A stretch of 23,904 bases of DNA from Macrostomum lignano (taxonomy: Eukaryota). The translations under genes and the position numbers were made by a program. Location of the stretch: positions 1-23,904 of the forward strand of contig NIVC01004237.1 in NCBI GenBank assembly GCA_002269645.1. Direction: 5' to 3'. A model generated the notes under the pieces. The model had not been told where the DNA came from. It searched no databases and saw only the letters and a program-made list of their open reading frames with translations. Below, piece after piece: positions 1,235-23,434 of the stretch (its first letter is position 1; every line of letters starts with the position of its first letter).

Positions 1235-1748
1235 TCGAGAGACACACTTCAGATTGCGACAGACACACTTCATGCTGTGGTAGACACACTTCATGCTGTG
1301 GTAGACACACTTCAGGCTGTGGTAGACACACTTCAGGCTGTGGTAGACACACTTCAGGCTGTGGTAGACACTTCAGGATATGGTAATCACACTTCAGGAT
1401 ATGGTAGACACACTTCAGGATATGGTAGACACACTTCAGGCTGTGGTAGACACACTTCAGGCTGTGGTAGACACACTTCAGGCTGTGGTAGACACACTTC
1501 AGGCTGTGGTAGACACACTTCAGGATATGGTAGACACACTTCAGGCTGTGGTAGACACACTTCAGGCTGTGGTAGACACACTTCAGGCTGTGGTAGACAC
1601 ACTTCAGGCTGTGGTAGACACTTCAGGCTGTGGTAGACACACTTCAGGCTGTGGTAGACACACTTCAGGCTGTGGTAGACACACTTCAGGCTGTGGTAGA
1701 CACACTTCAGGCTGTGGTAGACACACTTCAGGATATGGTAGACACACT
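1235..1748. repeat. 21-bp minisatellite (CTGTGGTAGACACACTTCAGG)n in G-alpha-like intron
   Basis: Over 20 near-identical tandem units; explains the AVVDTLQ / CLPQPEV ORFs. Confidence 0.95.
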
Positions 1749-1836
1749 TAAGACGTCGAGGTATTTGGAATTATTAGATGTTTAAGAAAGAAACTGTTTT
1801 AACGTGTGTCGTGTTGTACTAGAGTAAAAAACAAAC

Positions 1837-5573: not shown

Positions 5574-6004
5574 CTGTCTTAAATTTTCATTTAAAACCAA
5601 CCAAGTGTAAAAACTATTATTCACTTGTTTATATTTTTTCTAGAAAAATTGACAAGAACTTTTCCTGTTAGTCTGTTACAAAGCTGTCTGTTAAAAAATT
5701 GAAAATTATATTGTATCATTTAGCTTAATGTTATTATAGAGAATAAATAAACTTAAAACAATACTGTATGTTTTACGTACAGTTTTTACTTTAGAAAAAA
5801 TATCTTTGTCTCAGTAAGATATCGCTTAAATTCTAGGATTTCTCGTTCTGTGCAAACAGTTACAAAGTTCTTGTGGGCCGTATTAACGAAGGAGGGCAGT
5901 GCTAAACAAAAACTATTCACAACTTTTAAAAAGTTATTGAAATTCACTGTTATTTGATAATAATAGTTAGGATGCGTCTTCATCATCGGCCATGGTTTCC
6001 TCAC

Positions 6005-8539
6005 TTGACTGACAGCGGGTTTCTCTTAGTATTGGCCCTCTCGTTCGTCGGTCTCTGCCGATACTCCACCCCGATGCCGTCCACGACCGCCCGATTCTTG
6101 CGCGTCTCCGTCTGGCTCTCCTCGCCCAGAACCCGGCGACCCTCCTCGCTGACGACCTCCTGCGTGACCGTGAGAAGTTTCAGCATCTTATTAATCTTTA
6201 GAATTCTAGCCACCTCTTTGCAAGCTCTCGTGTCCATTGGCACCTGGCGTAAGAATAGCTTCTCAAGCTTGTTATTAATTTTCAGCGCTTCGGATAGAGA
6301 GAAGAAGCAGACATTGTCCAGGCGGATTCCGCTCAAATCCAGCAGGACAATGGTCCGATTGCTAGAGAATGCGGCGATGAAAGTGTTAAAGGCCATCGCA
6401 TCAATCTTGAGGTTAGCCAAGATCAGGCCTTCTAGACTCTTGCTCTCCATCAGCTTTCCGTTGAGATCCTGCGATGCCACTATGCTCATCTGGCAGCCAG
6501 AAAAGTCTAGAATGCGCAGGTTGTCCGCAAATTTAGTTGGCAAATTTTTTATTATGCTTCCAACCAGCGACATGTGGTGACAATTTTGAAATGCGAACGT
6601 TTCTAGTTTAGTCATGTTCGAGCAGGCTTCGCGCATGTTGTTTAGCATTTTTGGCGACAACTGGTCCAGCTTCTTTCCTGACTCGTCGATGCACTCAAGA
6701 TTCTTCAGATGAAAGCCGGTCTGATCGGGCTTCTTACGCCTGATTTCCATCTGGCCTGTAGAATTGGCGGGGTCCTCTGGCTCCGGACAGCACACGGTTT
6801 GAAGGAAGTCTGCCATTAGATCCTTCTCTGTCCAGTAGATGCGGAGCGTCTTGATGTGAACGTTCGTTTTCATTGCGGTAGCCAGACTTTTGTATGCCTC
6901 AAGCGTCTCTTTGGCTAGCAGATCTAGGCGCAAGTCCACCTCTTGGATGGTCGTGTGGTTAAACTTGATCATCTTGGACAGGCCTGTAAGCGACAATCTC
7001 GGAATGATGCCCTCGTGCTTCACGGTGAATCGCTCTGGCAGCGATTCAACAATTTTCTTGCCAAGATCTCTGCGGGCCATGTCCATGACCGCCACGCATT
7101 CCAGACTGAGCTGGTAGTCCATGATCTTGCCCTCGACCAGTTGACTGTCTTCTGGCGACGTAGCCGCTGGCATTTTCATGCGACTCGCTTTGCCTCGCCG
7201 TTTGTTATACTGCAGTATCTTTGCAAACAGTTCCCGGGTGGCCGGCGTGTCGTTGTCCGACTTGCGGATGCTGCAGTAGAACACAACAACATTGTAGGAG
7301 ATCGGAGTCATACTCATGTTCTGGAAGAAGCGGCTAGCTTCATCTGTTCCACTAGTGTCTAGATTTTTCGCGGCGAGATACTCTTGAATAAGACGATTGC
7401 CAAACATGTAGCGCTGGTTATCCTCTGCGGTGAGGTTTGTAGCCAGTTGAATCAGGCCGAACTTAGTCATCATGTGGTCCTCCTTGGCCAAAATGAAAGT
7501 TGCGCTGCCTTTCTTTATGGTGTCCATAGCGCGTTCGGACAGCATTGCGTAGGCGCGATTCGCTTCGAAGCGACTCTCCTTTTCGCGTTCGATCAGCTTC
7601 AACTTGATGCAGGAGACAAACTGTTCCACAATTGTTGTCGGAGAGTTCAGATCGATACTCATGCGCATGTCGGTCAGCAGGCAGAAGAACGAACAGTACA
7701 AAGGCACCTGTGAGTAATGTCGCAGGGACGCTATTTTGCTTTGATTTGAATTTTCACCGTTTGAATCCTGTTGTTGCTGCTGATCGTTTCCTTGACCCTT
7801 GCTAGAGCTGCGGCTTAGTTTTGTGCTGACTTTGTCCGTGTTTTCCCTCTCCAAAGGTCGCTCGTCTCTGGGCTTTGCCGAGGTCACAGATGTCGCCGAT
7901 TCTGACGACCCGCGTCGCCTCTGCGGCTCCTGCGACTTTTTCGCTGCATCCAGCAGCTTTTGAAGCTCAGTTGATTTTTTTGCCACTACTAGCTTGTTTA
8001 GAAACGAGGAAAAGTGTTCCCACGGCTTCTTAGCTAGTTTGACGTACTTCTGAACGTACTCCTCTGCCTGGGATTTGGCGAATCCGGTCAGAATTACCTT
8101 GCGCTGGTAGCGGTGCATCAGTCTGACTGTAAAGTTAGTCTGACTAAATACCAGAATGTGCAGTTCCGGCATGATGTTCTCAAATAGCAAACTCTTCATC
8201 TCATCATTTAGATTGTCTTCGTAGCCATCTATGATGAGCAGTGTGCTCGCCTGGTGCATGTTCATCACCTCCCAAATTTCGCGTTCGGCCAGCTTGCAGT
8301 CGCCTCCGAAAAGCTGTTCCATCATCATCACTTTCACTGTGGGCGCTGTTACTTTAAGATCAAGCAAGATTAGCAGTTGGAAAGGCCGTCCGAATACGTT
8401 TTCGTCCAAAGACCATTTGTAGGCCATATACTTAGCCAGCGTACTCTTCCCTGTTCCAGGGTCACCCTCAATAACTACTGTATGCGGGTCTTTTTCGCCT
8501 TCCTTATAATCAAAAACTTGGAAGGCGTTGACTGACTTT
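6005..8539 (-). CDS. NLR-like gene, NACHT-WHD-LRR exon
   Basis: Acceptor gcag|A at 8539. Walker A GDPGTGKS (8443-8466), Walker B LLIIDGYED, ILTGF, VPLYC, QEYLAA, then RI-type LRRs (LRILDFSGCQM, LEGLILANLKI, IVLLDLSGIRL, LEKLFLRQVPM). No frameshifts. If unspliced, it stops at 6001. Confidence 0.93.
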
Positions 8540-8616
8540 CTGCAATTTTAAATTGAGAAATCAAAGTTGAAAATTATGTCTTGCTTAATGATCTGATCTG
8601 TTTTCCTGCTACTTAC

Positions 8617-8758
8617 CCATTCAAATTGAGCAGCTGCTGTTGGCAGTAGAATTCGGCAATGTCTGTTTCAACTTTAGTGTACCATGGAATCGGATTCCAT
8701 TTGGCGTACGCGGTGGAGTACCGCTCTCGAAGAATGTTGTTACAGTAAGGTAGACCCT
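8617..8758 (-). CDS. NLR-like gene, pre-NACHT (FISNA-like) exon
   Basis: ttcag|AG...GG|gtaagt, phases 1 and 2 match both neighbours. Encodes GLPYCNNILRERYSTAYAKWNPIPWYTKVETDIAEFYCQQQLLNLNG, with the PxPW motif typical upstream of invertebrate NACHT domains. Confidence 0.88.
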
Positions 8759-8835
8759 CTGAAGAAACAGAAGAAACAGAAAAATCCTGTGATCAACTCT
8801 TAGAAGAGGATTTACTAATTATTATAAATACTTAC

Positions 8836-9970
8836 GTGGTTTATTAGCAAGGATGTCGGCCTTAGCGGCCTGGTAGTCCTGGTGCATCTGCTGGTACACC
8901 TGTTCGTTCTTGGGTTTCAGCGATTCAACGAACTCATCCAACACATTGCCAGATTTTGGCACTAGAAAGTCGATCAACGTCGACATCTGCTCGTTGTTGC
9001 GCAGAGTAGAAAATATTTCCGTGCTCTCGTCTTGGGTAATAATCTCCTTGTTCATCAGATGCTCAACCACTGTGTCCGCTTTTACATCGTTGAGCAGCTG
9101 TTCGTAGTACTTGTCGAGAATTAGGCGCTCCGCTAATACCATGCCAGTTTTGATATGAGCCCATCTCTGACAGCGCGACTTGTCGCTCATGTCCATCGTC
9201 GCCTTTCCAACAACCGACTGGCGTTTTTTCGTTTCCGACGTGTCCAAATCGCGCGTCTTGAGCCGTTTCTGCAGAATAGGAATCTCTTCGCGCTTCTTCT
9301 TTCGTTCTTGGTTTTCGATTTCTCTCTTCAACTGGCTGACCTCTTGGCGGTACCAGACGAGGAATTCGCCCAGAATGAAGCGCGATTCAGTCTCGTCCAT
9401 GCTAGTGTCCTGCTTGTATGCGTTCATACAGTCTGCTGCACCCGAGTGTCCCAGTCGCTGGAGCTGCTCGGCAATGCGGCTAAACAGTCTGTTAGCTGCG
9501 CTCGCCTTTAAGGTCTGCAGCGAGGCGAGCTCGCGTTGAATGCCCAGTAGGCGTTGCAGCGCTGCGCCCTGGCTGTCATCGCGAGGTTCCGGATCTCCCA
9601 TCCAGCCGTTTGGCTGCGGCTTCGTCACATCGCAGGTGTATTTTACTAACAGGAGCAGCAGACGCAGGTCGTAGTTGTCAGCGGACACGGAAGATTTCTC
9701 CTTCGGGTAGAGCGTCTGCCAGTCGTCTTCGGTTAGCATGTCTTTGATCTTAAGTCGCCTCAGCGTCCGGTGAATGTCCGGCGAGGCCAAGTGTTCCGTT
9801 AGCTCGTCCGTTGGATGCTTGGAATCGAATAGGCTTCTCAAGCACGCCTTGCCCTCTCGCATGAGAAAGTGGCACACCTGGATAGGTTCTCTACGCTCCT
9901 CTCGTCGGTCATGTCCAACTGCAGCTTGGGCGTGTTGTCTACCACGCCGAACTGAAATTTTGGATGTCAT
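8836..9970 (-). CDS. NLR-like gene, HEPN(DZIP3-like), coiled coil and CARD-like exon
   Basis: Donor C|GTAAGT at 8835. LRSLFDSKHP...WQTLYP...YDLRLLLLLVKYTC...NGW..P...D resembles DZIP3-type HEPN. LDKYYEQLLNDVKADTVVEHLMNKEIIT...LIDFL...DEFVESL resembles a CARD. The exon may begin at the acceptor at 9951 rather than the ATG at 9970. Confidence 0.88.
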
Positions 9971-10033
9971 TAACCAATGTTAAAATGCAACATTTTAGTA
10001 AAGTATCCAACAGTTAGACAGTTAGTAACTCAC

Positions 10034-10121
10034 AACCACTTGATTTTTCGGCCGAGCGGCCAAGGTCATTCGACGAACTTCTGGCATCCTCAGCTGTGAG
10101 CTGCAGGTTTTCTGTCAGCTT
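10034..10121 (-). CDS. NLR-like gene, candidate upstream exon
   Basis: taacag|AAG...T|GTGAGT, open frame KLTENLQLTAEDARSSSNDLGRSAEKSSG; phase 1 fits the acceptor tttcag|TT at 9951. The start codon lies further upstream and was not identified. Confidence 0.5.
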
Positions 10122-11337: not shown

Positions 11338-11434
11338 GTTCACTTTGCTGGCTTTGCATTTTATTAGGAAACTCCGGCTTCTATTCAATCCTTGCTGCCA
11401 TTGCCCTGTCAGACTGTGTGTATCCTCCCCTCCC

Positions 11435-12012
11435 CTCTACCTGTTTATGTCTCCCCTCTACCTGTCTGTGTCGCCACTCTACCTGTCTGTGTCTCCCCTC
11501 TACCTGTCTGTGTCTTCCCTCTACTGTCTGTGTCTTCCCTCTACCTGTCTGTCTTCCCTCTACCTGTCTGTGTCTCCCCTCTACCTGTCTGTGTCGCCAT
11601 CTACCTGTCTGTGTCTCCCCTCTACCTGTCTGTGTCTCCCCTCTACCTGCCTGTGTCTCCCCTCTACCTGTCTGTCTTCACTCTACCTGTCTGTGTCGCC
11701 ACTCTACCTGTCTGTGTCTCCCCTCTACCTGTCTGTGTCTCCCCTTTACCTGTCTGTGTCTCCCCTCTACCTGTCTTTGTCTCCCCTCTACCTGTCTGTG
11801 TCTCCCCTCTACCTGTCTGTGTCTCCCCTCTACCTGTCTGTGTCTCCCCTCTACCTGTCTGTGTCTCCCCTCTACCTGTCTGTGTCTCCCCTCTACCTGT
11901 CTGTGTCTCCCCTCTACCTGTCTGTGTCTCCCCTCTACCTGTCTGTGTCTCCCCTCTACCTGTCTGTGTCTCCCCTCTACCTGTCTGTGTCTCCCCTCTA
12001 CCTGTCTGTGTC
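11435..12012. repeat. 21-bp minisatellite (CTCTACCTGTCTGTGTCTCCC)n in BRCA2 intron
   Basis: Tandem units, diverged at the left and homogeneous at the right; explains the PLYLSVS / LPSTCLC ORFs. Confidence 0.95.
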
Positions 12013-12138
12013 TGGCCGTCTGACAATTGTCTCGCCAGCATTTTTCTCTGCCTATACTATTTACCACTTGCTACTGTTGGTCAGTAGTTTATAAGCAGCG
12101 TGTGATCATTTGACGCATTAATTAGTTTCCCGATTTAG

Positions 12139-12597
12139 GTGACCCTCACGGACGGCTGGTACTGCATCGGCGCACAGCTGGATCCCCTGCTGTGCCGCGC
12201 AGCCTCCGCCGGCCTCATCAAACCGGGCACCCGGCTGCTCACCTGCCAGGCTGAACTGATTGGCTGCTCTGAGGCCTGCCAGCCGCTGGAAGCGCCGGCC
12301 AGCGCCGCTCTCCGTCTCCATGGCAACAGCACCCGACGCTGCGTTGCCAACCGAAGAGTCCGGCTGGGCTTCGCCGACGCCTCGCCGATGCCGGTGTCGC
12401 TCAGCTCACTGCGGCCCGACGGCGGCAAGGCTGGCGCTCTGCACCTGTTCGTCAGCCGGCGGTACCCCCGGCAGTTCATGGAGCGCAGCCCTGGCAGCGA
12501 CGCCAGGGTGTTCCGCGGGGCTCGAGCCGAGGACCGACGGGCCAGGGAGTTCGAGGCTGAGGCCCGCCGGCGAATGGAGGAAGCTGTGGAGGACCAG
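12139..12597 (+). CDS. BRCA2: BRCA2 exon (OB1 and start of OB2/Tower)
   Basis: tttag|GTG...CAG|gttggt. VTLTDGWYCIGAQLDPLL...AELIGCSEACQPLEAPASAALRLHGNSTRR...SLRPDGG...RRYPRQFME matches human ELTDGWYAVKAQLDPPL...[29 protein letters not shown]...SLFSDGG...RAYPIQWME. Confidence 0.95.
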
Positions 12598-12611
12598 GTT
12601 GGTGGCTGCTT

Positions 12612-13056
12612 CCAGTTGCTGGGCCGCCAGCCTCCCAGATCCCCAGTTGCTGGACCAGACTCCCAGATCCCCAGTTGCTGGACCAGACTCCCAGATCCCC
12701 AGTTGCTGGCCAGACTCCCAGATCCCCAGTTGCTGGGCCGCCAGCCTCCCAGATCCCCAGTTGCTGGACCAGCCTCCCAGATCCTCAGTTGCTGGGCCGC
12801 CAGCCTCCCAGATCCTCAGTTTGCTGGACCAGACTCCCAGATCCCCAGTTGCTGGGCCAGACTCCCAGATCCCCAGTTGCTGGGCCAGACTCCCAGATCC
12901 CCAGTTGCTGGGCCAGACTCCCAGATCCCCAGATCCCCAGTTGCTGGGCCAGCCAGCCTCCCAGATCCCCAGTTGCTTGGCCAGACTCCCAGATCCCCAG
13001 TTGCTGGGCCAGACTCCCAGATCCTCAGTTGCTGGGCCGCCAGCCTCCCAGATCCC
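12612..13056 (+). repeat. ~28-bp composite minisatellite (CCAGTTGCTGGGCCAGCCTCCCAGATCC-like) filling a BRCA2 intron
   Basis: Tandem variants between the donor at 12598 and the acceptor at 13077; same family as 23022-23425. Confidence 0.93.
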
Positions 13057-13077
13057 AACACCGCATCCCAATTTCAG

Positions 13078-13461
13078 CTGGGCTCCAAGCCCCCGCAGCA
13101 GCGCGGCCGTCTCTACCAGCCTGATGAAGTGTCCCAGCTGAGCACCGGCGAGGAGCTTCAGGCCGCCCTGCGCTCCGCCCTGAACGCGGACGAACTGCAG
13201 GCCTGGCTGACGGAGCGTCAGCGAGACGTCCTGACTCGGCACCGGGAGCAGCTGCTGCCGCCGCTCGTCCAGCAGCGTCAGGTGACGCCGCTGGTTCGCC
13301 TGCTGGTCATCGGCACCGAGGACGCCGACTTGGACGAAGGCGCCGTGGCCACCCTGACTGTGTGGAACCCGGAGGAGGGCGCCGAGTCCTGGCTGCGCGA
13401 GGGCTGCGGCCTGCTGGTGCTCGGGGCGAATGTGGGATCCGCTGCTTCCGGCGGGCATCGG
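13078..13461 (+). CDS. BRCA2: BRCA2 exon (three-helix bundle and OB2)
   Basis: tttcag|CTG...CGG|gtgcga. VSQLSTGEELQAALRSALNADELQAWLTERQRDVLTRHREQL and RQVTPLVRLLV...LTVWNP...LREG match human LQDGAELYEAV...EEQLRALNNHRQML and RDVTTVWKLRIV...LSIWRP...LTEG. Confidence 0.88.
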
Positions 13462-13497
13462 GTGCGATTTTGTCGGGTGGGGGGGGGGGTTGGTTGC

Positions 13498-14030
13498 TAG
13501 GAAATCGCTCATAGGGTCATCGTGTTTTTAGGAAATCGCTCATAGGGTCATCGTGTTTTTAGGAAATCGCTCATAGGGTCATCGTGTTTTTAGGAAATCG
13601 CTCATAGGGTCATCGTGTTTTTAGGAAATCGCTCATAGGGTCATCGTGTTTTTAGGAAATCGCTCATAGGGTCATCGTGTTTTTAGGAAATCGCTCATAG
13701 GGTCATCGTGTTTTTAGGAAATCGCTCATAGGGTCATCGTGTTTTTAGGAAATCGCTCATAGGGTCATCGTGTTTTTAGGAAATCGCTCATAGGGTCATC
13801 GTGTTTTTAGGAAATCGCTCATAGGGTCATCGTGTTTTTAGGAAATCGCTCATAGTGTCATGGTTTTATAATGAAATCCCTCATAGGGTCATGATGTTAT
13901 AAAGGAATCGCTCATAGGGTCATGGTGTTATAAGAGAATCGCTCATAGGGTCATGGTGTTATAAGAGAATCGCTCATAGGGTCATGGTGTTATAAGAGAA
14001 TCGGTCATAGGGCCATGGTGTTATAAGGGA
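13498..14030. repeat. 31-bp minisatellite (GAAATCGCTCATAGGGTCATCGTGTTTTTAG)n in BRCA2 intron
   Basis: About 11-12 near-perfect copies to ~13860, then diverged ~32-bp copies. Confidence 0.95.
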
Positions 14031-15849: not shown

Positions 15850-16780
15850 AGTTTATGACAGTTTGTTAAAAGAATTGTTTATGGAAGTGCTTAAAGATTC
15901 TTATAAGAGTTTATGACAGGTTGCTTAAACAGTTTATGACAGGTTTGTTAAACAGTTTATGACAGGTTGGTTAAACAGTTTATGACAGGTTGTTTAAACA
16001 GTTTATGACAGGTTGGTTAAACAGTTTATGACAGGTTGGTTAAACAGTTTATGGGAGGTTGGTTAAACAGTCTATGAGAGGTTGGTTAAACAGTTTATGA
16101 GTTTGTTCAAACAGTTTATGAGACTGGTTAAACAGTTTATGGGAGGTTGGTTAAACAGTTTATGGAGGTTGGTTAAACAGTTTATGGAGGTTGGTTAAAC
16201 AGTCTATGAGAGGTTGGTTAAACAGTTTATGAGTTTGTTCAAACAGTTTATGAGACTGGTTAAACAGTTTATGACAGGTTGTTAAACAGTTTATGAGACT
16301 GGTTAAACAGTTTATGACAGGTTGGTTAAACAGTTTATGGGAGGTTGGTTAAACAGTTTATGGGAGGTTGGTTAAACAGTTATGAGAGGTTGGTTAAACA
16401 GTTTATGAGTTTTTTCAAACAGTTTATGAGACTGGTTAAACAGTTTATGACAGGTTGGTTAAACAGTTTATGGGAGGTTGGTTAAACAGTTTATGGGAGG
16501 TTGGTTAAACAGTCTATGAGAGGTTGGTTAAACAGTTTATGAGTTTGTTCAAACAGTTTATGAGACTGGTTAAACAGTTTATGACAGGTTGGTTAAACAG
16601 TTTATGGGAGGTTGGTTAAACAGTTTATGGGAGGTTGGTTAAACAGTCTATGAGAGGTTGGTTAAACAGTTTATGAGTTTGTTCAAACAGTTTATGGGAC
16701 TGGTTAAACAGTTTATGACAGGTTGGTTAAACAGTTTATGAGAGGTTGGTTCAATAGTTTTTTAGAGGTAGGTTAATTAT
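15850..16780. repeat. 20-23-bp satellite (TAAACAGTTTATGRSAGGTTGGT) with higher-order structure
   Basis: Monomer variants ATGACAGG, ATGGGAGG, CTATGAGAGG, ATGAGTTTGTTC and ATGAGACTGG recur in a fixed order. Confidence 0.93.
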
Positions 16781-17399
16781 TTTATGTAGGTATATTTAAA
16801 CAGTTTATGGGTGGCTTAAGAGTATATAGTTTTTGGAGGACTATGAAACTGTTTATTTGAAAGTTGTGAGAGGTCATTAAACAGTTTATAGAGAATCCCA
16901 TGAGTCTTGAGTGGAAGATGCATTCAACAGATTAAACAGGACTTTTCAAACAAAGATCATTATAGATATCGTTCAAGGCGCGGAAGAGCATCAGGTCCCA
17001 AACGTTGAAATTGAGGTTTTCAAGAGTTTTTTTTCAATTTTTTCTGGTCTTCTTTTGTTGCTCGGCATCTTACCACCAGCTTGTAGCCTCTCATTTTTTC
17101 AATTTCTTTAAAGCCTTTTTCTGCTTTGCATTTCCAATTGCATTGATTTTCTGTCAGTTCGTTGCATGTCTTTATTATTTATCTTCGGTACCGACCTTGC
17201 CGCTGTACTCGCACACAGCATGGCAGGTGCTGTTCAGCTTTTTAATATTTCTTGCATAAGTACGAAAGTTTTGCATGCGTAACACCCCAAATAAAAACTT
17301 TTTGTGAATTCAAACCGAAAGCCATCTGTTTTTTTCTAATGTCTGTTCTTTTTAAAACGCAGCTCTCTTTTGCTCGCTCTGTGACTTATTTCGCCTGAA

Positions 17400-17419
17400 G
17401 ACAGACAGACAGACAGATT

Positions 17420-17451
<32 letters not shown>

Positions 17452-17462
17452 CACACACACAC

Positions 17463-17501
<39 letters not shown>

Positions 17502-17613
17502 CACAGACAGACAGACAGACAGACAGACACACAGACAGACAGACAGACAGGCAGACAGACACACACACAGACACACACAGACAGACAGACAGACAAACAG
17601 AGACAGGCAGACA

Positions 17614-17651
<38 letters not shown>

Positions 17652-17804
17652 GACAGACAAACAGAGACAGGCAGACAGACACACACACACACACAGACAG
17701 ACAAACAGAGACAGGCACACACACACAGACAGACAGACAGACAGGCAGACAGACACACACACACAGACAGACAGACACACACACAGACAGACAGACAGAC
17801 ACAC

Positions 17805-17841
<37 letters not shown>

Positions 17842-17894
17842 CACACACACAGACAGACAGACACACACACAGACAGACAGACAGACAGACACAC

Positions 17895-17943
<49 letters not shown>

Positions 17944-17968
17944 CACAGACAAACAGACAGACACACAC

Positions 17969-18001
<33 letters not shown>

Positions 18002-18126
18002 TAGAGACAGACAGGCAGGCAGACAGGCAGGCAGACACACAGACAGACAGACAGACAGACACACAGACAGACAGACAGACAGACACACACACAGACAGAC
18101 AGACAGACAGACAGACACACACACAC

Positions 18127-18157
<31 letters not shown>

Positions 18158-18210
18158 CACACACACAGACAGACAGACACACACACAGACAGACAGACAG
18201 ACAGACACAC

Positions 18211-18259
<49 letters not shown>

Positions 18260-18284
18260 CACAGACAAACAGACAGACACACAC

Positions 18285-18321
<37 letters not shown>

Positions 18322-18442
18322 TAGAGACAGACAGGCAGGCAGACAGGCAGGCAGACACACAGACAGACAGACAGACAGACACACAGACAGACAGACAGAC
18401 AGACACACACACAGACAGACAGACAGACAGACACACACACAC

Positions 18443-18481
<39 letters not shown>

Positions 18482-18550
18482 CACACACACACAGACACAC
18501 ACACACACACAGACAGACAGACAGACACACAGACAGACAGGCAGGCAGAC
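17400..18550. repeat. Compound (CAGA)n/(CA)n microsatellite, ~1.15 kb
   Basis: Directly visible; explains the CLSV / DRQT ORFs. Confidence 0.97.
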
Positions 18551-19469
18551 AGTGCAAATACAAAAACCTGAAGACACAAGCCTACCTGAAGCTGTTATTA
18601 TACATCGAACCTGCGGTATGCTGTGGATATTGACAGCAGGTATAACATATGCCTGCCGCATTCCCTACGGCAGTTTGGCAGCAGCGGCAGCAACTTAAAG
18701 AAATGATAATTAAAGACTTCAGAAAGATTGGGTGCGACTCCAATTACTCATAGTAGTGCCGAAGGGTTTATAAAGCTGAATTATATTATATTATCAGACA
18801 GTGCAGCGCGCAGTTACAGAAAATGAGATGGACGAGAAAACAGATAGCTAAAAAAAGTGACACAAATCAATCAATCAATTAACCTAAAAATGAAGAAACA
18901 AACTCAGTTTATGTACAACAGTGCATGTAACACACGCAAATTAAACAGACATATATGACCTGCAACTATGGCACACAGCAATAAATCATAAATAATGATA
19001 TTCAATCACTCAATCGAACCCGTCGAGGAAACCCAAGCAACCAATATGAAGTATCAAAATTTGTACTTTGAAAATGAATTATTTATGAGCTAGGCTGCCT
19101 TAAGCCCTGGCCTGGTCGGGGTGCACATTTACACAAATATATATCGAATTAATTTAACTGGGCACAGATTAACTACTTAGTTAGTAGTTTTCCAATTTTG
19201 ACGCGTATTAAACAACGTGTTGAAAAATCACAATGCCCAGTTAAAATTAATTGGCAAAAGAAGTAAAAGTAAAAAAGCAGCTAAAAACAGCGATTCGTTA
19301 CGGGCAATTAAATAAAATAAGTATAGTTGCTGATGCTGACTGACTGTGATGGAGTTAATCCAATTTGATTCACGTTTTTTAAACTAGCAAACAATTTTAA
19401 ACCTATAATTGACAGGTTGACAGGTAACTTGAGGTTGAGTGATTAGTTAAGAGAGACGTTCTGAAGGTG

Positions 19470-19920
19470 GATTACACTAATTATGATGGGGATTATTGGG
19501 ACACCAATTATGATGGGGATTATTGGGACACCAATTATGATGGGGATTATTGGGACACCAATTATGATGGGGATTATTGGGACACCAATTATGATGGGGA
19601 TTATTGGGACACCAATTATGATGGGGATTATTGGGACACCAATTATGATGGGGATTATTGGGACACCAATTATGATGGGGATTATTGGGACACCAATTAT
19701 GATGGGGATTATTGGGACACCAATTATGATGGGATTATTGGGACACCAATTATGATGGGGACTTTTTGGGACACTAATTATGATGGAGATTATTGGGACA
19801 CTAATTACGGAGGGGATTATTGGGACACTAATTACGGAGGGGATTATTGGGACACTAATTACGGAGGGGATTATTGGGACACTAACTACGGAGGGGATTA
19901 TTCGGAGGCCAATTATGGTT
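19470..19920 (+). repeat. 27-bp tandem repeat (GGGACACCAATTATGATGGGGATTATT)n, possibly coding (DTNYDGDYW)n
   Basis: About 16 units; ORF 19467-19934 spans the array. Confidence 0.9.
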
Positions 19921-21080: not shown

Positions 21081-22190
21081 GGAGAATCTTATGGGGAATT
21101 GGAGATAATCTTATGGGGAGTTTGGGAAGAATCATGAGGGGGATGGAGGAGAATCTTATGGGGAGTTTGGGAAGAATCATGAGGAGGATGGGGAGAATCT
21201 TATGGGGAGTTTGGGAAGAATCATGAGAAGGATGGGGGAGAATCTTATGGGGAGTTTGGGAAGAATTATGAGGGGGATGGAGGAGAATCTTATGGGGAGT
21301 TTGGGAAGAATCATGAGGGGGTGGGAGAGAATCTTATGGGGAATTTGGGAAGAATCATGAGGAGGATGGGGAGAATCTTATGGGGAGTTTGGGAAGAATC
21401 ATGAGGGAGTGGGGGAGAATCTTATGGGAGTTGGGGAAGAATCATGAGGGGATGGAGGAGAATCTTATGGGGAGTTGGGGAAGAATCATGAAGGGGATGG
21501 GGAGAATCTTATGGGGAGTTGGGGAAGAATCATGAAGGGGATGGGGAGAATCTTATGGGGAGTTTGGGAAGAATCATGAGGGAGTGGGGGAGAATCTTAT
21601 GGGGAGTTGGGGAAGAATCATGAAGGGGATGGGGGAGAATCTTATGGGGAGTTGGGGAAGAATCATGAAGGGGATGGGGAGAATCTTATGGGGAGTTGGG
21701 GAAGAATCATGAAGGGATGGGGGAGAATCTTATGGGGAGTTGGGGAAGAATCATGAGGGGATGGGGGAGAATCTTATGGGGAGTTTGGGAAGAATCATGA
21801 GGAGGATGGGGGAGAATCTTATGGGGAGTTGGGGAAGAATCATGAGGAGGATGGGGGAGAATCTTATGGGGAGTTTGGGAAGAATCATGAGGAGGATGGG
21901 GGAGAATCTTATGGGAGTTGGGGAAGAATTATGAGGGGGGTGGGGGAGAATCTTATGGGGAGTTTGGGAAGAATCATGAGGAGGATGGGGAGAATCTTAT
22001 GGGAGTTGGGGAAGAATCATGAGGGGGATGGAGGAGAATCTTATGGGGAGTTGGGGAAGAATCATGAGGGGATGGGGGAGAATCTTATGGGAGTTGGGGA
22101 AGAATCATGAGGGGATGGGGGAAATCTTATGGGGAGTTGGGGAAGAATCATGAAGGAGGTGGGGGAGAATCATAAAGGGAGTTGGGAAAG
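21081..22190. repeat. ~44-bp purine-rich minisatellite (GGGGAGAATCTTATGGGGAGTTTGGGAAGAATCATGAGGGGATG)n
   Basis: Over 20 tandem units of 43-45 bp, each with several G-runs. Confidence 0.95.
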
Positions 22191-22790
22191 AAACTTCAGA
22201 ACTGTGGGAGATTCTTAAAAATTAGGAAATAATCTTATCGGGCATTGGGTGCTGAGGATAATTGTTCGCTATACATACTAGAAACGCAAAAAAATAAACG
22301 AGACAAGAAAAAAATTTTAGAAGATATTTTAATGTTCACAGGGACAATGAGTGCTAAGGACAATAAGAAGAATTGTAGAAATTATTTTGAAATTTTATTC
22401 AGACAAAATCGTTTTACAGTTGCATACTTAACATCCAATATACATTGCTTACACCCGTTTACAACAAAAAATAGTGCAAATGACGGTAGAGAACTTCTTA
22501 AACATGCTTTATCAATTTTGCATAATAGAAGTTAAAGAAGCAACTGTACAACAATTTTTGTTAGAAAGTATATATTGTTTATATTAACGTGTCACTGGTA
22601 TTAAAACTTTTAATAATCAATAAATATTTAAAATAATACACGCTAAATAGAGATATTGTGCTTAAGTTTGAATCATAAATATTGATGAAATAGATTTTCT
22701 GCTTAAAAATTTTACTTACGAAAGTATGATTAATGAAGTATCCCATATACAAGCTATTATAATTATAACTAAACATTTTCTAATAGAAAT

Positions 22791-23021: not shown

Positions 23022-23425
23022 CTAGCAACTGGGGATCTGGGAGGCTGGCCCAGCAACTGGGGATCTGGAGGCTGGCCCAGCAACTGGGGATCTGGGAGGC
23101 TGGCCCAGCAACTGGGGATCTGGGAGGCTGGCCCAGAAACTGGGATCTGGGAGGCTGGCCCAGCAACTGGGATCTGGGAGGCTGGCCCAGCAAACTGGGA
23201 TCTGGGAGGCTGGCCCAGCAACTGGGATCTGGAGGCTGGCCCAGCAACTGGGATCTGGGGGCTGGTAGCCCAGCAACTGAGGATCTGGGAGGCTGGCCCA
23301 GCAACTGGGGATCTGGGAGGCTGGCCCAGCAAATGAGGAACTGGGAGGCTGGCCTAGCAACTGGGGATCTGGAGGCTGGTGGCCCAGCAACTGGGGATCT
23401 GGAGGCTGGTGTCCCAGCAACTGAG
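23022..23425 (-). repeat. ~28-bp composite minisatellite filling an IAP intron (same family as 12612-13056)
   Basis: Reverse complement units CCAGTTGCTGGGCCAGCCTCCCAGATCC, inside intron 22988-23434. Confidence 0.93.
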
Positions 23426-23434
23426 GACAATCAC

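What the first reader, a model, noticed from the sequence alone, without database searches (positions are those of the whole stretch)
7396..8466. NACHT keeps Walker A but three other nucleotide-switch motifs are substituted
Seen: Walker A GDPGTGKS is intact; Walker B is IIDGYED (8215-8229, usual DGhDE); sensor 1 is LVFSQ (8140-8148, usual hTSR/hTTR); the winged-helix motif is MFGNRLIQEYLAA (7396-7404, usual FxH...QEFLAA). Known: sensor-1 Arg contacts the gamma-phosphate, and the WHD His binds ADP in the autoinhibited state; NLRC4 H443 substitutions are autoactivating. Inference: a hydrolysis-poor or non-switching NLR acting as scaffold, helper or decoy, or constitutively primed.
Basis: partly seen in the sequence, partly recalled or inferred. 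Interest (0 to 1): 0.7.

Follow-up and report, generated by a model that had tools for sequence, protein, structure and literature searches.

The report
Flatworm NLR with family-wide altered ATP pocket
The odd ATP-switch motifs are real, but they mark a whole conserved family of HEPN-CARD-NACHT-LRR immune-type receptors found across flatworms, annelids, molluscs, brachiopods and ribbon worms, so this gene is a normal family member and not a broken one-off.

Summary
On the minus strand the window encodes a Macrostomum lignano HEPN_DZIP3-CARD-NACHT-LRR protein (Mlig026612 copy). It has Walker A GDPGTGKS, Walker B LLIIDGYED, sensor-1 VFSQ (Gln for Arg) and winged-helix FGN (Asn for His) at the stated coordinates. 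Alignment to canonical NLRs and to NLRC4 puts these residues in the expected columns (Q571 = NLRC4 T280, N819 = NLRC4 H443).

The substitutions are traits of a family. In a 26-member clade with named members from Lingula, Tubulanus, Owenia, Capitella, Plakobranchus and Haliotis, sensor-1 Arg is kept in 2/26, the WHD His in 1/26 and the last Walker-B Glu in 3/26. In 108 canonical NLR modules the counts are 107, 101 and 106. The P-loop glycines, Walker-B Asp and HD1 Pro stay invariant in the clade, and the P-loop Lys stays in about 91%. The closest ortholog (about 45% identity, unidentified species) has DGYEE / FSH / FPN.

Mammalian NLRC4 (sensor-1 Thr, DGYNE, low ATPase) and NAIP (no WHD His) are functional precedents. 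The most likely mechanism, which is inferred, is that nucleotide is bound as a structural latch with little hydrolysis. Nothing points to a decoy. Interest is moderate.

The parts
6001..10087 (-). Whole gene: Macrostomum lignano Mlig026612-type HEPN_DZIP3-CARD-NACHT-LRR protein in four exons (about 10087-10034, 9951-8836, 8758-8617 and 8539-6001 including the stop).
   Evidence: The 845-aa exon is 100% identical to NCBI proteins PAA48099.1 and others. Exons were mapped by exact peptide matching, with splice contexts gtgagt / tttcag / gtaagt / ttgcag.
9389..9805 (-). HEPN_DZIP3 domain.
   Evidence: Pfam PF18738, 67.8 bits against a cut-off of 27.
8879..9118 (-). CARD domain.
   Evidence: Pfam PF00619, 37.1 bits against a cut-off of 23.9.
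8443..8466 (-). Walker A / P-loop GDPGTGKS (K469 of P0001), intact.
   Evidence: The G, G, G columns are near-invariant in both clade and canonical sets; the Lys column is 91% in the clade and 100% in canonical modules.
8215..8241 (-). Walker B LLIIDGYED. Asp542 is kept. The extended acidic pair reads ED where DE is usual.
   Evidence: The first Asp is present in 26/26 clade members and the last Glu in only 3/26.
8140..8157 (-). Beta-4 / sensor-1 ILVFSQ. Gln571 stands where canonical NLRs have Arg and NLRC4 has Thr280.
   Evidence: AF2 predicts a strand at module residues 127-132 that ends at this residue.
7753..7980 (-). Low-complexity K/S/Q/E-rich insert of about 75-85 aa in HD1. It is absent from every aligned relative and is predicted to be disordered.
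   Evidence: Gap in all other sequences. pLDDT is below 50 for module residues 207-257. The related species has an intron at this site.
7702..7707 (-). HD1 Val-Pro (P717), the adenine-contacting proline of the NLR 'GxP/P' motif, kept.
   Evidence: Invariant in the clade and in canonical NLRs. Its role is taken from PMC2323615.
7369..7410 (-). Winged-helix patch YMFGNRLIQEYLAA. Asn819 stands at the position of the ADP-contacting His (NLRC4 H443).
   Evidence: In the clade this column is N 10, C 8, S 6, T 1, H 1.
7096..7134 (-). HD2 motif EGKIMDYQLSLEC, a signature shared with clade members (EGRxxDFxLSLECL).
   Evidence: Seen in the modules printed and in the ortholog L002.
6121..6534 (-). Ribonuclease-inhibitor-type leucine-rich repeats.
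   Evidence: phmmer matches to the LRRs of NLRP14, NLRP5 and NLRP1 and to ribonuclease inhibitor, E 1e-7 to 1e-5, query residues 669-806.

Best explanation
The region encodes the NBD-HD1-WHD core of a genuine, conserved NLR. The gene is Macrostomum lignano Mlig026612, with architecture HEPN_DZIP3-CARD-NACHT-LRR. It belongs to a subfamily present across Lophotrochozoa (Platyhelminthes, Nemertea, Brachiopoda, Annelida, Mollusca).

The subfamily's common ancestor had already remodelled the nucleotide pocket. The residues that bind nucleotide are kept: P-loop Lys, Walker-B Asp and HD1 Pro. The residues that sense or hydrolyse the gamma-phosphate and lock ADP are gone: sensor-1 Arg, the terminal Glu of DGxDE and the WHD His. 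The His position now holds small polar residues, Asn in this protein.

Shown: the gene's identity, its architecture, the motif positions and the family-wide distribution of the variants.

Inferred: the protein still binds ADP/ATP but turns it over slowly or not at all. The nucleotide would then act as a structural latch, with Asn819 able to hydrogen-bond a phosphate. Activation would come from ligand- or partner-driven opening followed by CARD-mediated oligomeric signalling, as proposed for NLRC4, and not from an ATPase cycle.
For: - **Identity and architecture:**
- **Motif columns:**
- **Clade versus canonical counts:** sensor-1 Arg 2/26 vs 107/108; WHD His 1/26 vs 101/108; last Walker-B Glu 3/26 vs 106/108; first Walker-B Asp 26/26. 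All three residues are lost in 20/26 clade members and 0/108 canonical modules.
- **Binding residues kept:** P-loop G/G/G, W480, D542, G590 and P717 are invariant and the P-loop Lys is 91% conserved in the clade.
- **Clade support:** the clade is recovered by NJ with no canonical intruder; exact monophyly in 59/100 bootstraps and two or fewer intruders in 72/100.
- **Named members:** Lingula, Tubulanus, Owenia, Capitella, Plakobranchus, Haliotis. The same HEPN_DZIP3-CARD-NACHT architecture is found in five of them.
- **Nearest ortholog:** 42-47% identity, keeps DGYEE / FSH / FPN and the full-length layout.
- **Sequence link to solved structures:** the clade profile's best solved relative is NLRC4 (115 bits, against 77 or less for NLRPs and NOD2).
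- **Structure:** the AF2 model (pLDDT 74, pTM 0.73) matches autoinhibited NLRC4 4KXF best (TMq 0.57). It matches closed NLRP3/NOD2 at about 0.46-0.57 and open or active forms at 0.29-0.36.
- **Functional precedent:** NLRC4 has low ATPase, its open form is nucleotide-free, and its ADP is thought to be structural (PMC10803261). NLRP3 R351T, E306Q and H522D reduce turnover to 0.10-0.22x (PMC9633759).
Against: - No biochemical data exist for any member of this family. Nucleotide binding and low hydrolysis are inferred from motifs and from mutants of a distant paralog.
- AF2 favours closed NLR states it has seen in the PDB, so the closed model is weak evidence.
- I could not read model coordinates to measure the distance from Asn819 to the P-loop.
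- The clade was defined only from the best 150 HMMER representatives with an NJ tree of moderate support. Many members are exon-level predictions from unnamed assemblies.
- The sensor-1 column is highly variable in the clade (N, Q, E, S, H, T, K, D, G, R). That fits relaxation, but it would also fit compensation by a residue I did not identify.
- Two clade members (P0070, P0072) have even lost the P-loop Lys, so nucleotide binding itself may be dispensable in parts of the family.
Confidence: 0.55

Rival explanations
1. The receptor lacks the ADP-His lock and so rests open or 'primed', as NAIP does. The NACHT would not be held closed by nucleotide. Inhibition would be steric, through the LRR, the HEPN domain or the disordered insert, and ligand binding would license CARD signalling.
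For: The WHD His is absent here and in 25/26 clade members. NAIP also lacks it (PMC2323615), and inactive NAIP is reported to adopt a wide-open conformation (abstract of PMC10312664). NAIP is the second-best solved relative of the clade profile (87 bits).
Against: The AF2 model superposes far better on closed structures (TMq about 0.46-0.57) than on unliganded NAIP5 7RAV (0.33) or active NLRC4/NLRP3 (0.29-0.36). Asn, Ser and Cys at the His position can still donate a hydrogen bond. There are no BIR domains and no NAIP orthology.
Confidence: 0.17
2. One reading: this particular gene is a degenerate, non-switching NLR that acts as a scaffold, helper or decoy for canonical NLR partners.
For: Three switch residues deviate from consensus. 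NLRP3 mutants at the same positions lose ATPase and mostly lose signalling (PMC9633759). A unique disordered insert interrupts HD1.
Against: The variants are ancestral to a family conserved across at least five phyla with intact HEPN, CARD, NACHT and LRR, so they are not a lineage-specific decay. Five near-identical intact copies exist in M. lignano. The binding residues are under clear constraint. No canonical partner gene lies in the window. Family-level helper or scaffold roles are not excluded.
Confidence: 0.12
3. The protein is a normal ATPase switch with compensated chemistry. Asn819 replaces the His as phosphate ligand, and another basic residue, or a residue supplied in trans in the oligomer, takes over the sensor-1 role. 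The nucleotide cycle would then be essentially canonical.
For: The ED acidic pair is conservative (NLRP5 has DD; CIITA, NLRP4, NLRP8 and NLRP13 have EE). NLRP3 H522R keeps 0.86x activity and R351G keeps 0.40x. The P-loop, Walker-B Asp and HD1 Pro are invariant.
Against: A scan for columns conserved in the clade but rare in canonical NLRs found no new conserved Arg or Lys near the pocket. The sensor-1 column is not conserved within the clade (ten different residues), which argues that the position has lost its role and has not been re-tuned.
Confidence: 0.12
4. This copy is a pseudogene or a decaying duplicate.
For: The window copy has a 1-nt frame break near 9877 relative to the 1283-aa model. 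The genome holds several near-identical copies.
Against: The break lies upstream of Met49, and an annotated 1235-aa model (P0009) starts just after it with the HEPN domain intact. An 845-codon exon is open and 100% identical to other copies. The break is in a G-run and may be an assembly error.
Confidence: 0.04

Closest known systems
NLRC4 (mammalian CARD-NACHT-LRR; PDB 4KXF, 8FW2)
   Same: It has CARD, NACHT and RI-type LRR domains. Its sensor-1 position is not Arg (Thr280). Its extended Walker B is non-consensus with Tyr (DGYNE, against DGYED here). It is the best solved relative both by profile (115 bits) and by fold (TMq 0.57 to the autoinhibited form). It is a functional receptor with low ATPase and structural ADP.
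   Different: NLRC4 keeps the WHD His (H443) and has no HEPN domain. Reciprocal phmmer from NLRC4 prefers canonical invertebrate NLRs over this clade, and NLRC4 falls inside the clade in only 16/100 bootstraps. The shared variants therefore look parallel, not inherited.
NAIP / NLRP6 / NLRP8 / NLRX1 / CIITA (human NLRs without the WHD histidine)
   Same: They lack the Sensor-2-like His in the FxHxxQEhxA patch (PMC2323615). NAIP has Ser at that column and is the second-best solved relative (87 bits).
   Different: All of them keep the sensor-1 Arg (AVR, TTR, TAR). Their effector domains differ (BIR, PYD, or other). None carries the triple loss as a family trait.
HEPN-NLRs of invertebrates (noted in TIAMMAt, PMC8662601)
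   Same: They have an N-terminal HEPN domain fused to a NACHT-LRR and were reported in nine invertebrate taxa. This gene and the Lingula, Tubulanus, Owenia, Capitella and Haliotis proteins have exactly that layout plus a CARD.
   Different: In the passages I read, that paper describes domain architecture only. I found no description of the remodelled Walker B, sensor-1 and WHD residues, and no mention of a flatworm member.
Canonical invertebrate NACHT-LRR proteins (e.g. P0002-P0008, DEATH/NACHT/LRR)
   Same: The fold and motif order are the same: GxPGxGKS, hhhhDG, the GF motif, PL(N/F)xx and QE(F/Y)LAA.
   Different: They keep DGxDE, (T/S)(T/S)RP and FxH in 98/108 cases. They are 22-30% identical to this protein and fall outside the clade.

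Membership tests
NLR / NACHT-type STAND NTPase | NACHT domain above Pfam's gathering score | tested here: met
   PF05729, 57.3 bits against a cut-off of 26.7, residues 19-167 of the exon translation.
NLR / NACHT-type STAND NTPase | Walker A GxxxxGK[ST] | tested here: met
   GDPGTGKS at 8466-8443.
NLR / NACHT-type STAND NTPase | Walker B hhhhD with extended acidic pair (hhhhD[GAS]hDE) | tested here: inconclusive
   LLIIDGYED has the Asp and two acidic residues, but in the order ED. The strict DE is not met. Comparable variants exist in human NLRs (DD, EE, NE).
NLR / NACHT-type STAND NTPase | Sensor-1 Arg after beta-4 (hhhh[TS][TS]R) | tested here: not met
   ILVFSQ has Gln at the Arg column, which aligns to NLRC4 T280.
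NLR / NACHT-type STAND NTPase | HD1 proline that contacts adenine (GxP/P motif) | tested here: met
   VPLYC; P717 is invariant in both sets.
NLR / NACHT-type STAND NTPase | WHD patch FxHxxQEhxA with the ADP-binding His | tested here: not met
   F-G-N-R-L-I-Q-E-Y-L-A-A: the patch is present but Asn replaces His, and it aligns to NLRC4 H443.
NLR / NACHT-type STAND NTPase | NBD-HD1-WHD-HD2 fold | tested here: met
   AF2 pTM 0.73. All top Foldseek hits are NLRs (NLRC4, NLRP3, NOD2), with E down to 3.6e-14.
NLR / NACHT-type STAND NTPase | C-terminal LRR sensor and N-terminal death-fold effector | tested here: met
   RI/NLRP-type LRR matches. CARD at 37.1 bits against a cut-off of 23.9.
NLR / NACHT-type STAND NTPase | ATP binding and hydrolysis | not testable with these tools
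   This needs recombinant protein and nucleotide-binding and ATPase assays.
Lophotrochozoan HEPN_DZIP3-CARD-NACHT-LRR subfamily (defined here) | HEPN_DZIP3 then CARD upstream of the NACHT | tested here: met
   The window gene scores 67.8 and 37.1 bits. The order is the same in Tubulanus, Lingula, Owenia, Capitella and Haliotis.
Lophotrochozoan HEPN_DZIP3-CARD-NACHT-LRR subfamily (defined here) | Groups with these proteins to the exclusion of canonical NLRs | tested here: met
   NJ recovers a clade of 26 with no canonical member. Exact monophyly is found in 59/100 bootstraps and two or fewer intruders in 72/100. Support is moderate.
Lophotrochozoan HEPN_DZIP3-CARD-NACHT-LRR subfamily (defined here) | Shared loss of sensor-1 Arg, WHD His and terminal Walker-B Glu; shared HD2 motif EGxxxD(F/Y)xLSLEC | tested here: met
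   (20/26 clade members lose all three). The motif is seen.
NLRC4/NAIP orthologue | Reciprocal best similarity to NLRC4 or NAIP | tested here: not met
   The forward profile search favours NLRC4. NLRC4 and NAIP fragments score higher on canonical invertebrate NLRs than on clade members.
NLRC4/NAIP orthologue | BIR domains (NAIP) or the WHD His443 lock (NLRC4) | tested here: not met
   No BIR hit. Asn stands at the H443 column.

The most novel reading that the evidence does not exclude
An ancient, pan-lophotrochozoan NLR lineage (HEPN-CARD-NACHT-LRR) has changed its NACHT from an ATP-hydrolysing switch into a nucleotide-latched module, and in some members perhaps a nucleotide-independent one. 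It shed the sensor-1 Arg, the Walker-B Glu and the WHD His together, more than 500 million years ago. Its activation logic would then differ from the canonical ADP/ATP exchange model. It might be coupled to RNA sensing by the HEPN domain, which appears to be non-catalytic.
Probability: 0.25. Interest if true: 0.6.

Novelty: new variant of a known kind. Interest (0 to 1): 0.4.

Why it matters
NLR activation models rest on the ADP-locked / ATP-open cycle read out by the sensor-1 Arg and the WHD His. A whole animal NLR family has kept nucleotide-binding residues under constraint while discarding the hydrolysis and lock residues. It is a natural experiment on how far that cycle can be dispensed with. 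It complements the recent view that NLRC4 uses ADP structurally. It also gives a tractable model: M. lignano supports RNAi and transgenesis (my own knowledge). Flatworm NLRs and HEPN-NLRs are essentially uncharacterised. For genome annotation, the result warns against calling such motif-deviant NLRs decoys or pseudogenes on motif inspection alone.

Tried and rejected
1. **Word-indexed homolog searches.** Both runs returned only 8 and 17 hits and missed most of the family. The exhaustive HMMER representative search was needed.
2. **NLRC4/NAIP orthology.** The clade profile's top PDB hits and the 'NLRC4-like' name of the Plakobranchus member suggested it. I rejected it because the reciprocal phmmer prefers canonical NLRs and NLRC4 joins the clade in only 16/100 bootstraps.
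3. **The HD1 insert as an unspliced in-frame intron.** A candidate runs 7989-7708 (GTAGTG...CACAG, 282 nt). The related species has an intron at this place. Removing it would delete the conserved helix before the HD1 Pro (IASLRHYSQVP, predicted helical). A second acceptor at about 7731 would shift the frame. I therefore treat the insert as coding, but this is unproven without RNA data.
4. **A compensating basic residue.** A scan for columns conserved in the clade and rare in canonical NLRs found none near the pocket.
5. **Residue distances in the AF2 model.** No coordinate file is exposed.
6. **Literature.** I found no paper on Macrostomum NACHT genes or on Mlig026612. Zhu et al. 2022, Gene 843:146807, on lophotrochozoan NLR families, is not held. 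It might already describe this clade.
7. **dN/dS.** The M. lignano copies differ at only about 7 residues, and the next relative is saturated (about 45% identity), so I did not attempt it.
Full report
**What is there.** The finding lies in a single 845-codon exon on the minus strand (8539-6001). Together with three upstream exons (about 10087-10034, 9951-8836 and 8758-8617), this exon forms a gene with a clear domain order.
- HEPN_DZIP3: 67.8 bits.
- CARD: 37.1 bits.
- NACHT: 57.3 bits (all Pfam).
- Ribonuclease-inhibitor-type LRRs.

The exon translation is 100% identical to NCBI proteins of Macrostomum lignano (BOX15_Mlig026612g1/g4/g5). It differs at one residue from the 1283-aa representative P0001. 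At least five near-identical copies are annotated, and all carry the same motifs.

**Check of the observation.** Reading the strand gives the following coordinates.
- GDPGTGKS at 8466-8443.
- LLIIDGYED at 8241-8215.
- ILVFSQ at 8157-8140.
- YMFGNRLIQEYLAA at 7410-7369.

MAFFT alignments with seven canonical invertebrate NLRs and with 154 modules from an exhaustive HMMER search place these strings under the canonical motifs.
- DGYED falls under DGxDE.
- FSQ falls under (T/S)(T/S)R.
- FGN falls under F-x-H.

The flanking anchors are conserved (LTGF, VPLYC, QEYLAA). A profile of the family aligned to mouse NLRC4 puts the sensor-1 column on T280 and the WHD column on H443. The Walker B change is conservative. 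The Mg-binding Asp and two acidic residues are present, with only their order swapped. Human NLRs show DD, EE and NE at the same place (PMC2323615 Table 2).

**The variants belong to a family, not to this gene.** The top HMMER representatives split sharply. An NJ tree recovers a clade of 26 sequences that contains the query and no canonical NLR. Exact monophyly is found in 59/100 bootstraps and two or fewer intruders in 72/100.

| Residue | Clade (n=26) | Canonical modules (n=108) |
|---|---|---|
| Sensor-1 Arg kept | 2 | 107 |
| WHD His kept | 1 | 101 |
| Terminal Walker-B Glu kept | 3 | 106 |
| All three lost | 20 | 0 |

In the clade the His position holds N 10, C 8, S 6 and T 1. The binding elements are still constrained. 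The P-loop G/G/G columns, W480, Walker-B Asp542, G590 and HD1 Pro717 are invariant, and the P-loop Lys is kept in about 91%.

Named members come from several phyla.
- Lingula anatina (Brachiopoda).
- Tubulanus polymorphus (Nemertea).
- Owenia fusiformis and Capitella teleta (Annelida).
- Plakobranchus ocellatus and Haliotis spp. (Mollusca).

Five of them have the same HEPN_DZIP3-CARD-NACHT order.

The nearest ortholog comes from an unidentified relative (Logan assemblies of runs ERR14224706 and ERR14224705; loci L001 and L002). It is 42-47% identical and has DGYEE, FSH and FPN, with the same overall layout. Whether those homologs are functional is unknown, but their conservation argues that they are.

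**Structure-guided comparison.** An AF2 model of the module (14-sequence family alignment) gave mean pLDDT 74.4 and pTM 0.73. It has the expected strand order, with the sensor-1 residue at the end of beta-4. Only the insert and the C-terminal tail have low confidence. Foldseek against the PDB gave these matches.
- Autoinhibited NLRC4 (4KXF) ranks first: E 3.6e-14, TMq 0.57.
- Closed NLRP3 and ADP-bound NOD2 score about 0.46-0.57.
- Active NLRC4 and NLRP3 and unliganded wide-open NAIP5 score 0.29-0.36.

The model is thus a closed NLR. This is only weak evidence about the resting state, because AF2 tends to reproduce closed PDB states.

By sequence profile, NLRC4 (115 bits) and NAIP (87 bits) are the closest solved relatives, ahead of NLRPs and NOD2 (77 bits or less). 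The reverse search does not single out this clade. I therefore treat the NLRC4-like sensor-1 and Walker-B features as parallel and not as orthologous.

**How it most likely works.** Three points are shown: the protein is a full-length NLR, its nucleotide-binding residues are conserved, and its hydrolysis, sensing and lock residues are replaced across the family. The rest is inferred.

In NLRP3, R351T (the NLRC4 state) lowers ATP turnover to 0.10x, E306Q to 0.22x, D305A to 0.18x and H522D to 0.17x (PMC9633759). NLRC4 naturally has Thr at sensor-1. It shows low ATPase, is nucleotide-free when open, and is thought to use ADP structurally (PMC10803261).

By analogy, this family probably binds nucleotide as a latch, with Asn819 as a possible hydrogen-bond donor, and hydrolyses it poorly. 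Activation would come from ligand- or partner-induced opening and CARD-driven assembly. I give this reading about 0.55.

The rivals are as follows.
- An intrinsically open, NAIP-like resting state (0.17).
- A compensated, essentially normal ATPase (0.12).
- A decaying copy (0.04).

**Comparison with what is known.** HEPN-NLRs have been noted in nine invertebrate taxa (PMC8662601). Individual human NLRs lacking one of these residues are textbook cases. I found no description of two things: the coordinated triple loss as the ancestral state of a phylum-spanning family, and a flatworm member. One relevant paper (Zhu et al. 2022, Gene) could not be read. I therefore rate the finding a new variant of a known kind, with moderate interest.

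**Caveats.**
- The clade was drawn from the best 150 representatives only.
- Many members are exon-level predictions from unnamed assemblies.
- The tree is NJ with moderate support.
- No coordinates of the model were available for distance measurements.
- All functional statements are inferences.

Noticed in passing
window 9875-9880 (minus strand): This copy reads TCCAGGTGTGCC. The 1283-aa model needs one more G (..AGG GTG TGC..). The frame from exon 1 and the start of exon 2 therefore breaks just before VCHFLMREGK. The copy fits the 1235-aa annotated model P0009, which starts at Met (MREGK, 9862). The break could be a real frameshift or a homopolymer assembly error.
   Followed up: partly
window 7753-7980 (minus strand); L001 about 2316; L002 about 300: A K/S/Q/E-rich, predicted-disordered insert of about 75-85 aa, containing an RRRGSSES stretch, interrupts HD1. 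It is unique to M. lignano among the aligned relatives. The closest ortholog has an intron exactly there (donor CAG|GTGAGC after LAKLS). The M. lignano sequence has a good acceptor-like CACAG|GTGCCT at 7708. This suggests the insert arose from intron sequence or that there is alternative splicing.
   Followed up: partly
window about 9480-9520 (HEPN helix); P0018, P0019, P0031, P0035, P0070: In the HEPN_DZIP3 domains of this family, the segment where an Rx4-6H RNase motif would be expected reads R(E/K/R)(L/Q)L(A/V)S and has no His in any of six members. The HEPN domain may be non-catalytic. I did not check this against bona fide active DZIP3-type HEPN domains.
   Followed up: partly
P0070 (Haliotis cracherodii) and P0072: Two clade members have also lost the P-loop lysine (GAPGIGQT, GCSGSGNS). 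This hints that parts of the family may no longer need nucleotide at all.
   Followed up: no
window 12139-13500 (+): An ORF matches BRCA2 OB1 (72.8 bits) and, below the curated cut-off, the Tower domain (17.4 bits against 25). It is a BRCA2-like neighbour gene in a GC-rich stretch. A 28-bp minisatellite (12612-13056) lies inside the ORF.
   Followed up: no
window 1240-1749, 11430-12013, 13498-14022, 15908-16809, 17399-18552, 19474-19917, 21093-22192, 23024-23427: The window is dense in minisatellites (periods 21-44 bp, 14-40 copies), plus a 1.15-kb (AGAC)n array. The (AGAC)n array accounts for the 441-aa ORF at 17336-18661 and for the extreme skews in the composition profile. The 28-bp unit at 23024-23427 is the reverse complement of the one at 12612-13056.
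   Followed up: no
L001 / L002 versus window 6001-8539: Gene structure differs between the two species. M. lignano encodes NACHT through LRR in one 2.5-kb exon. The relative splits the same region with at least two long AT-rich introns, one after the NBD/HD1 helix and one just before the WHD FPN motif.
   Followed up: partly
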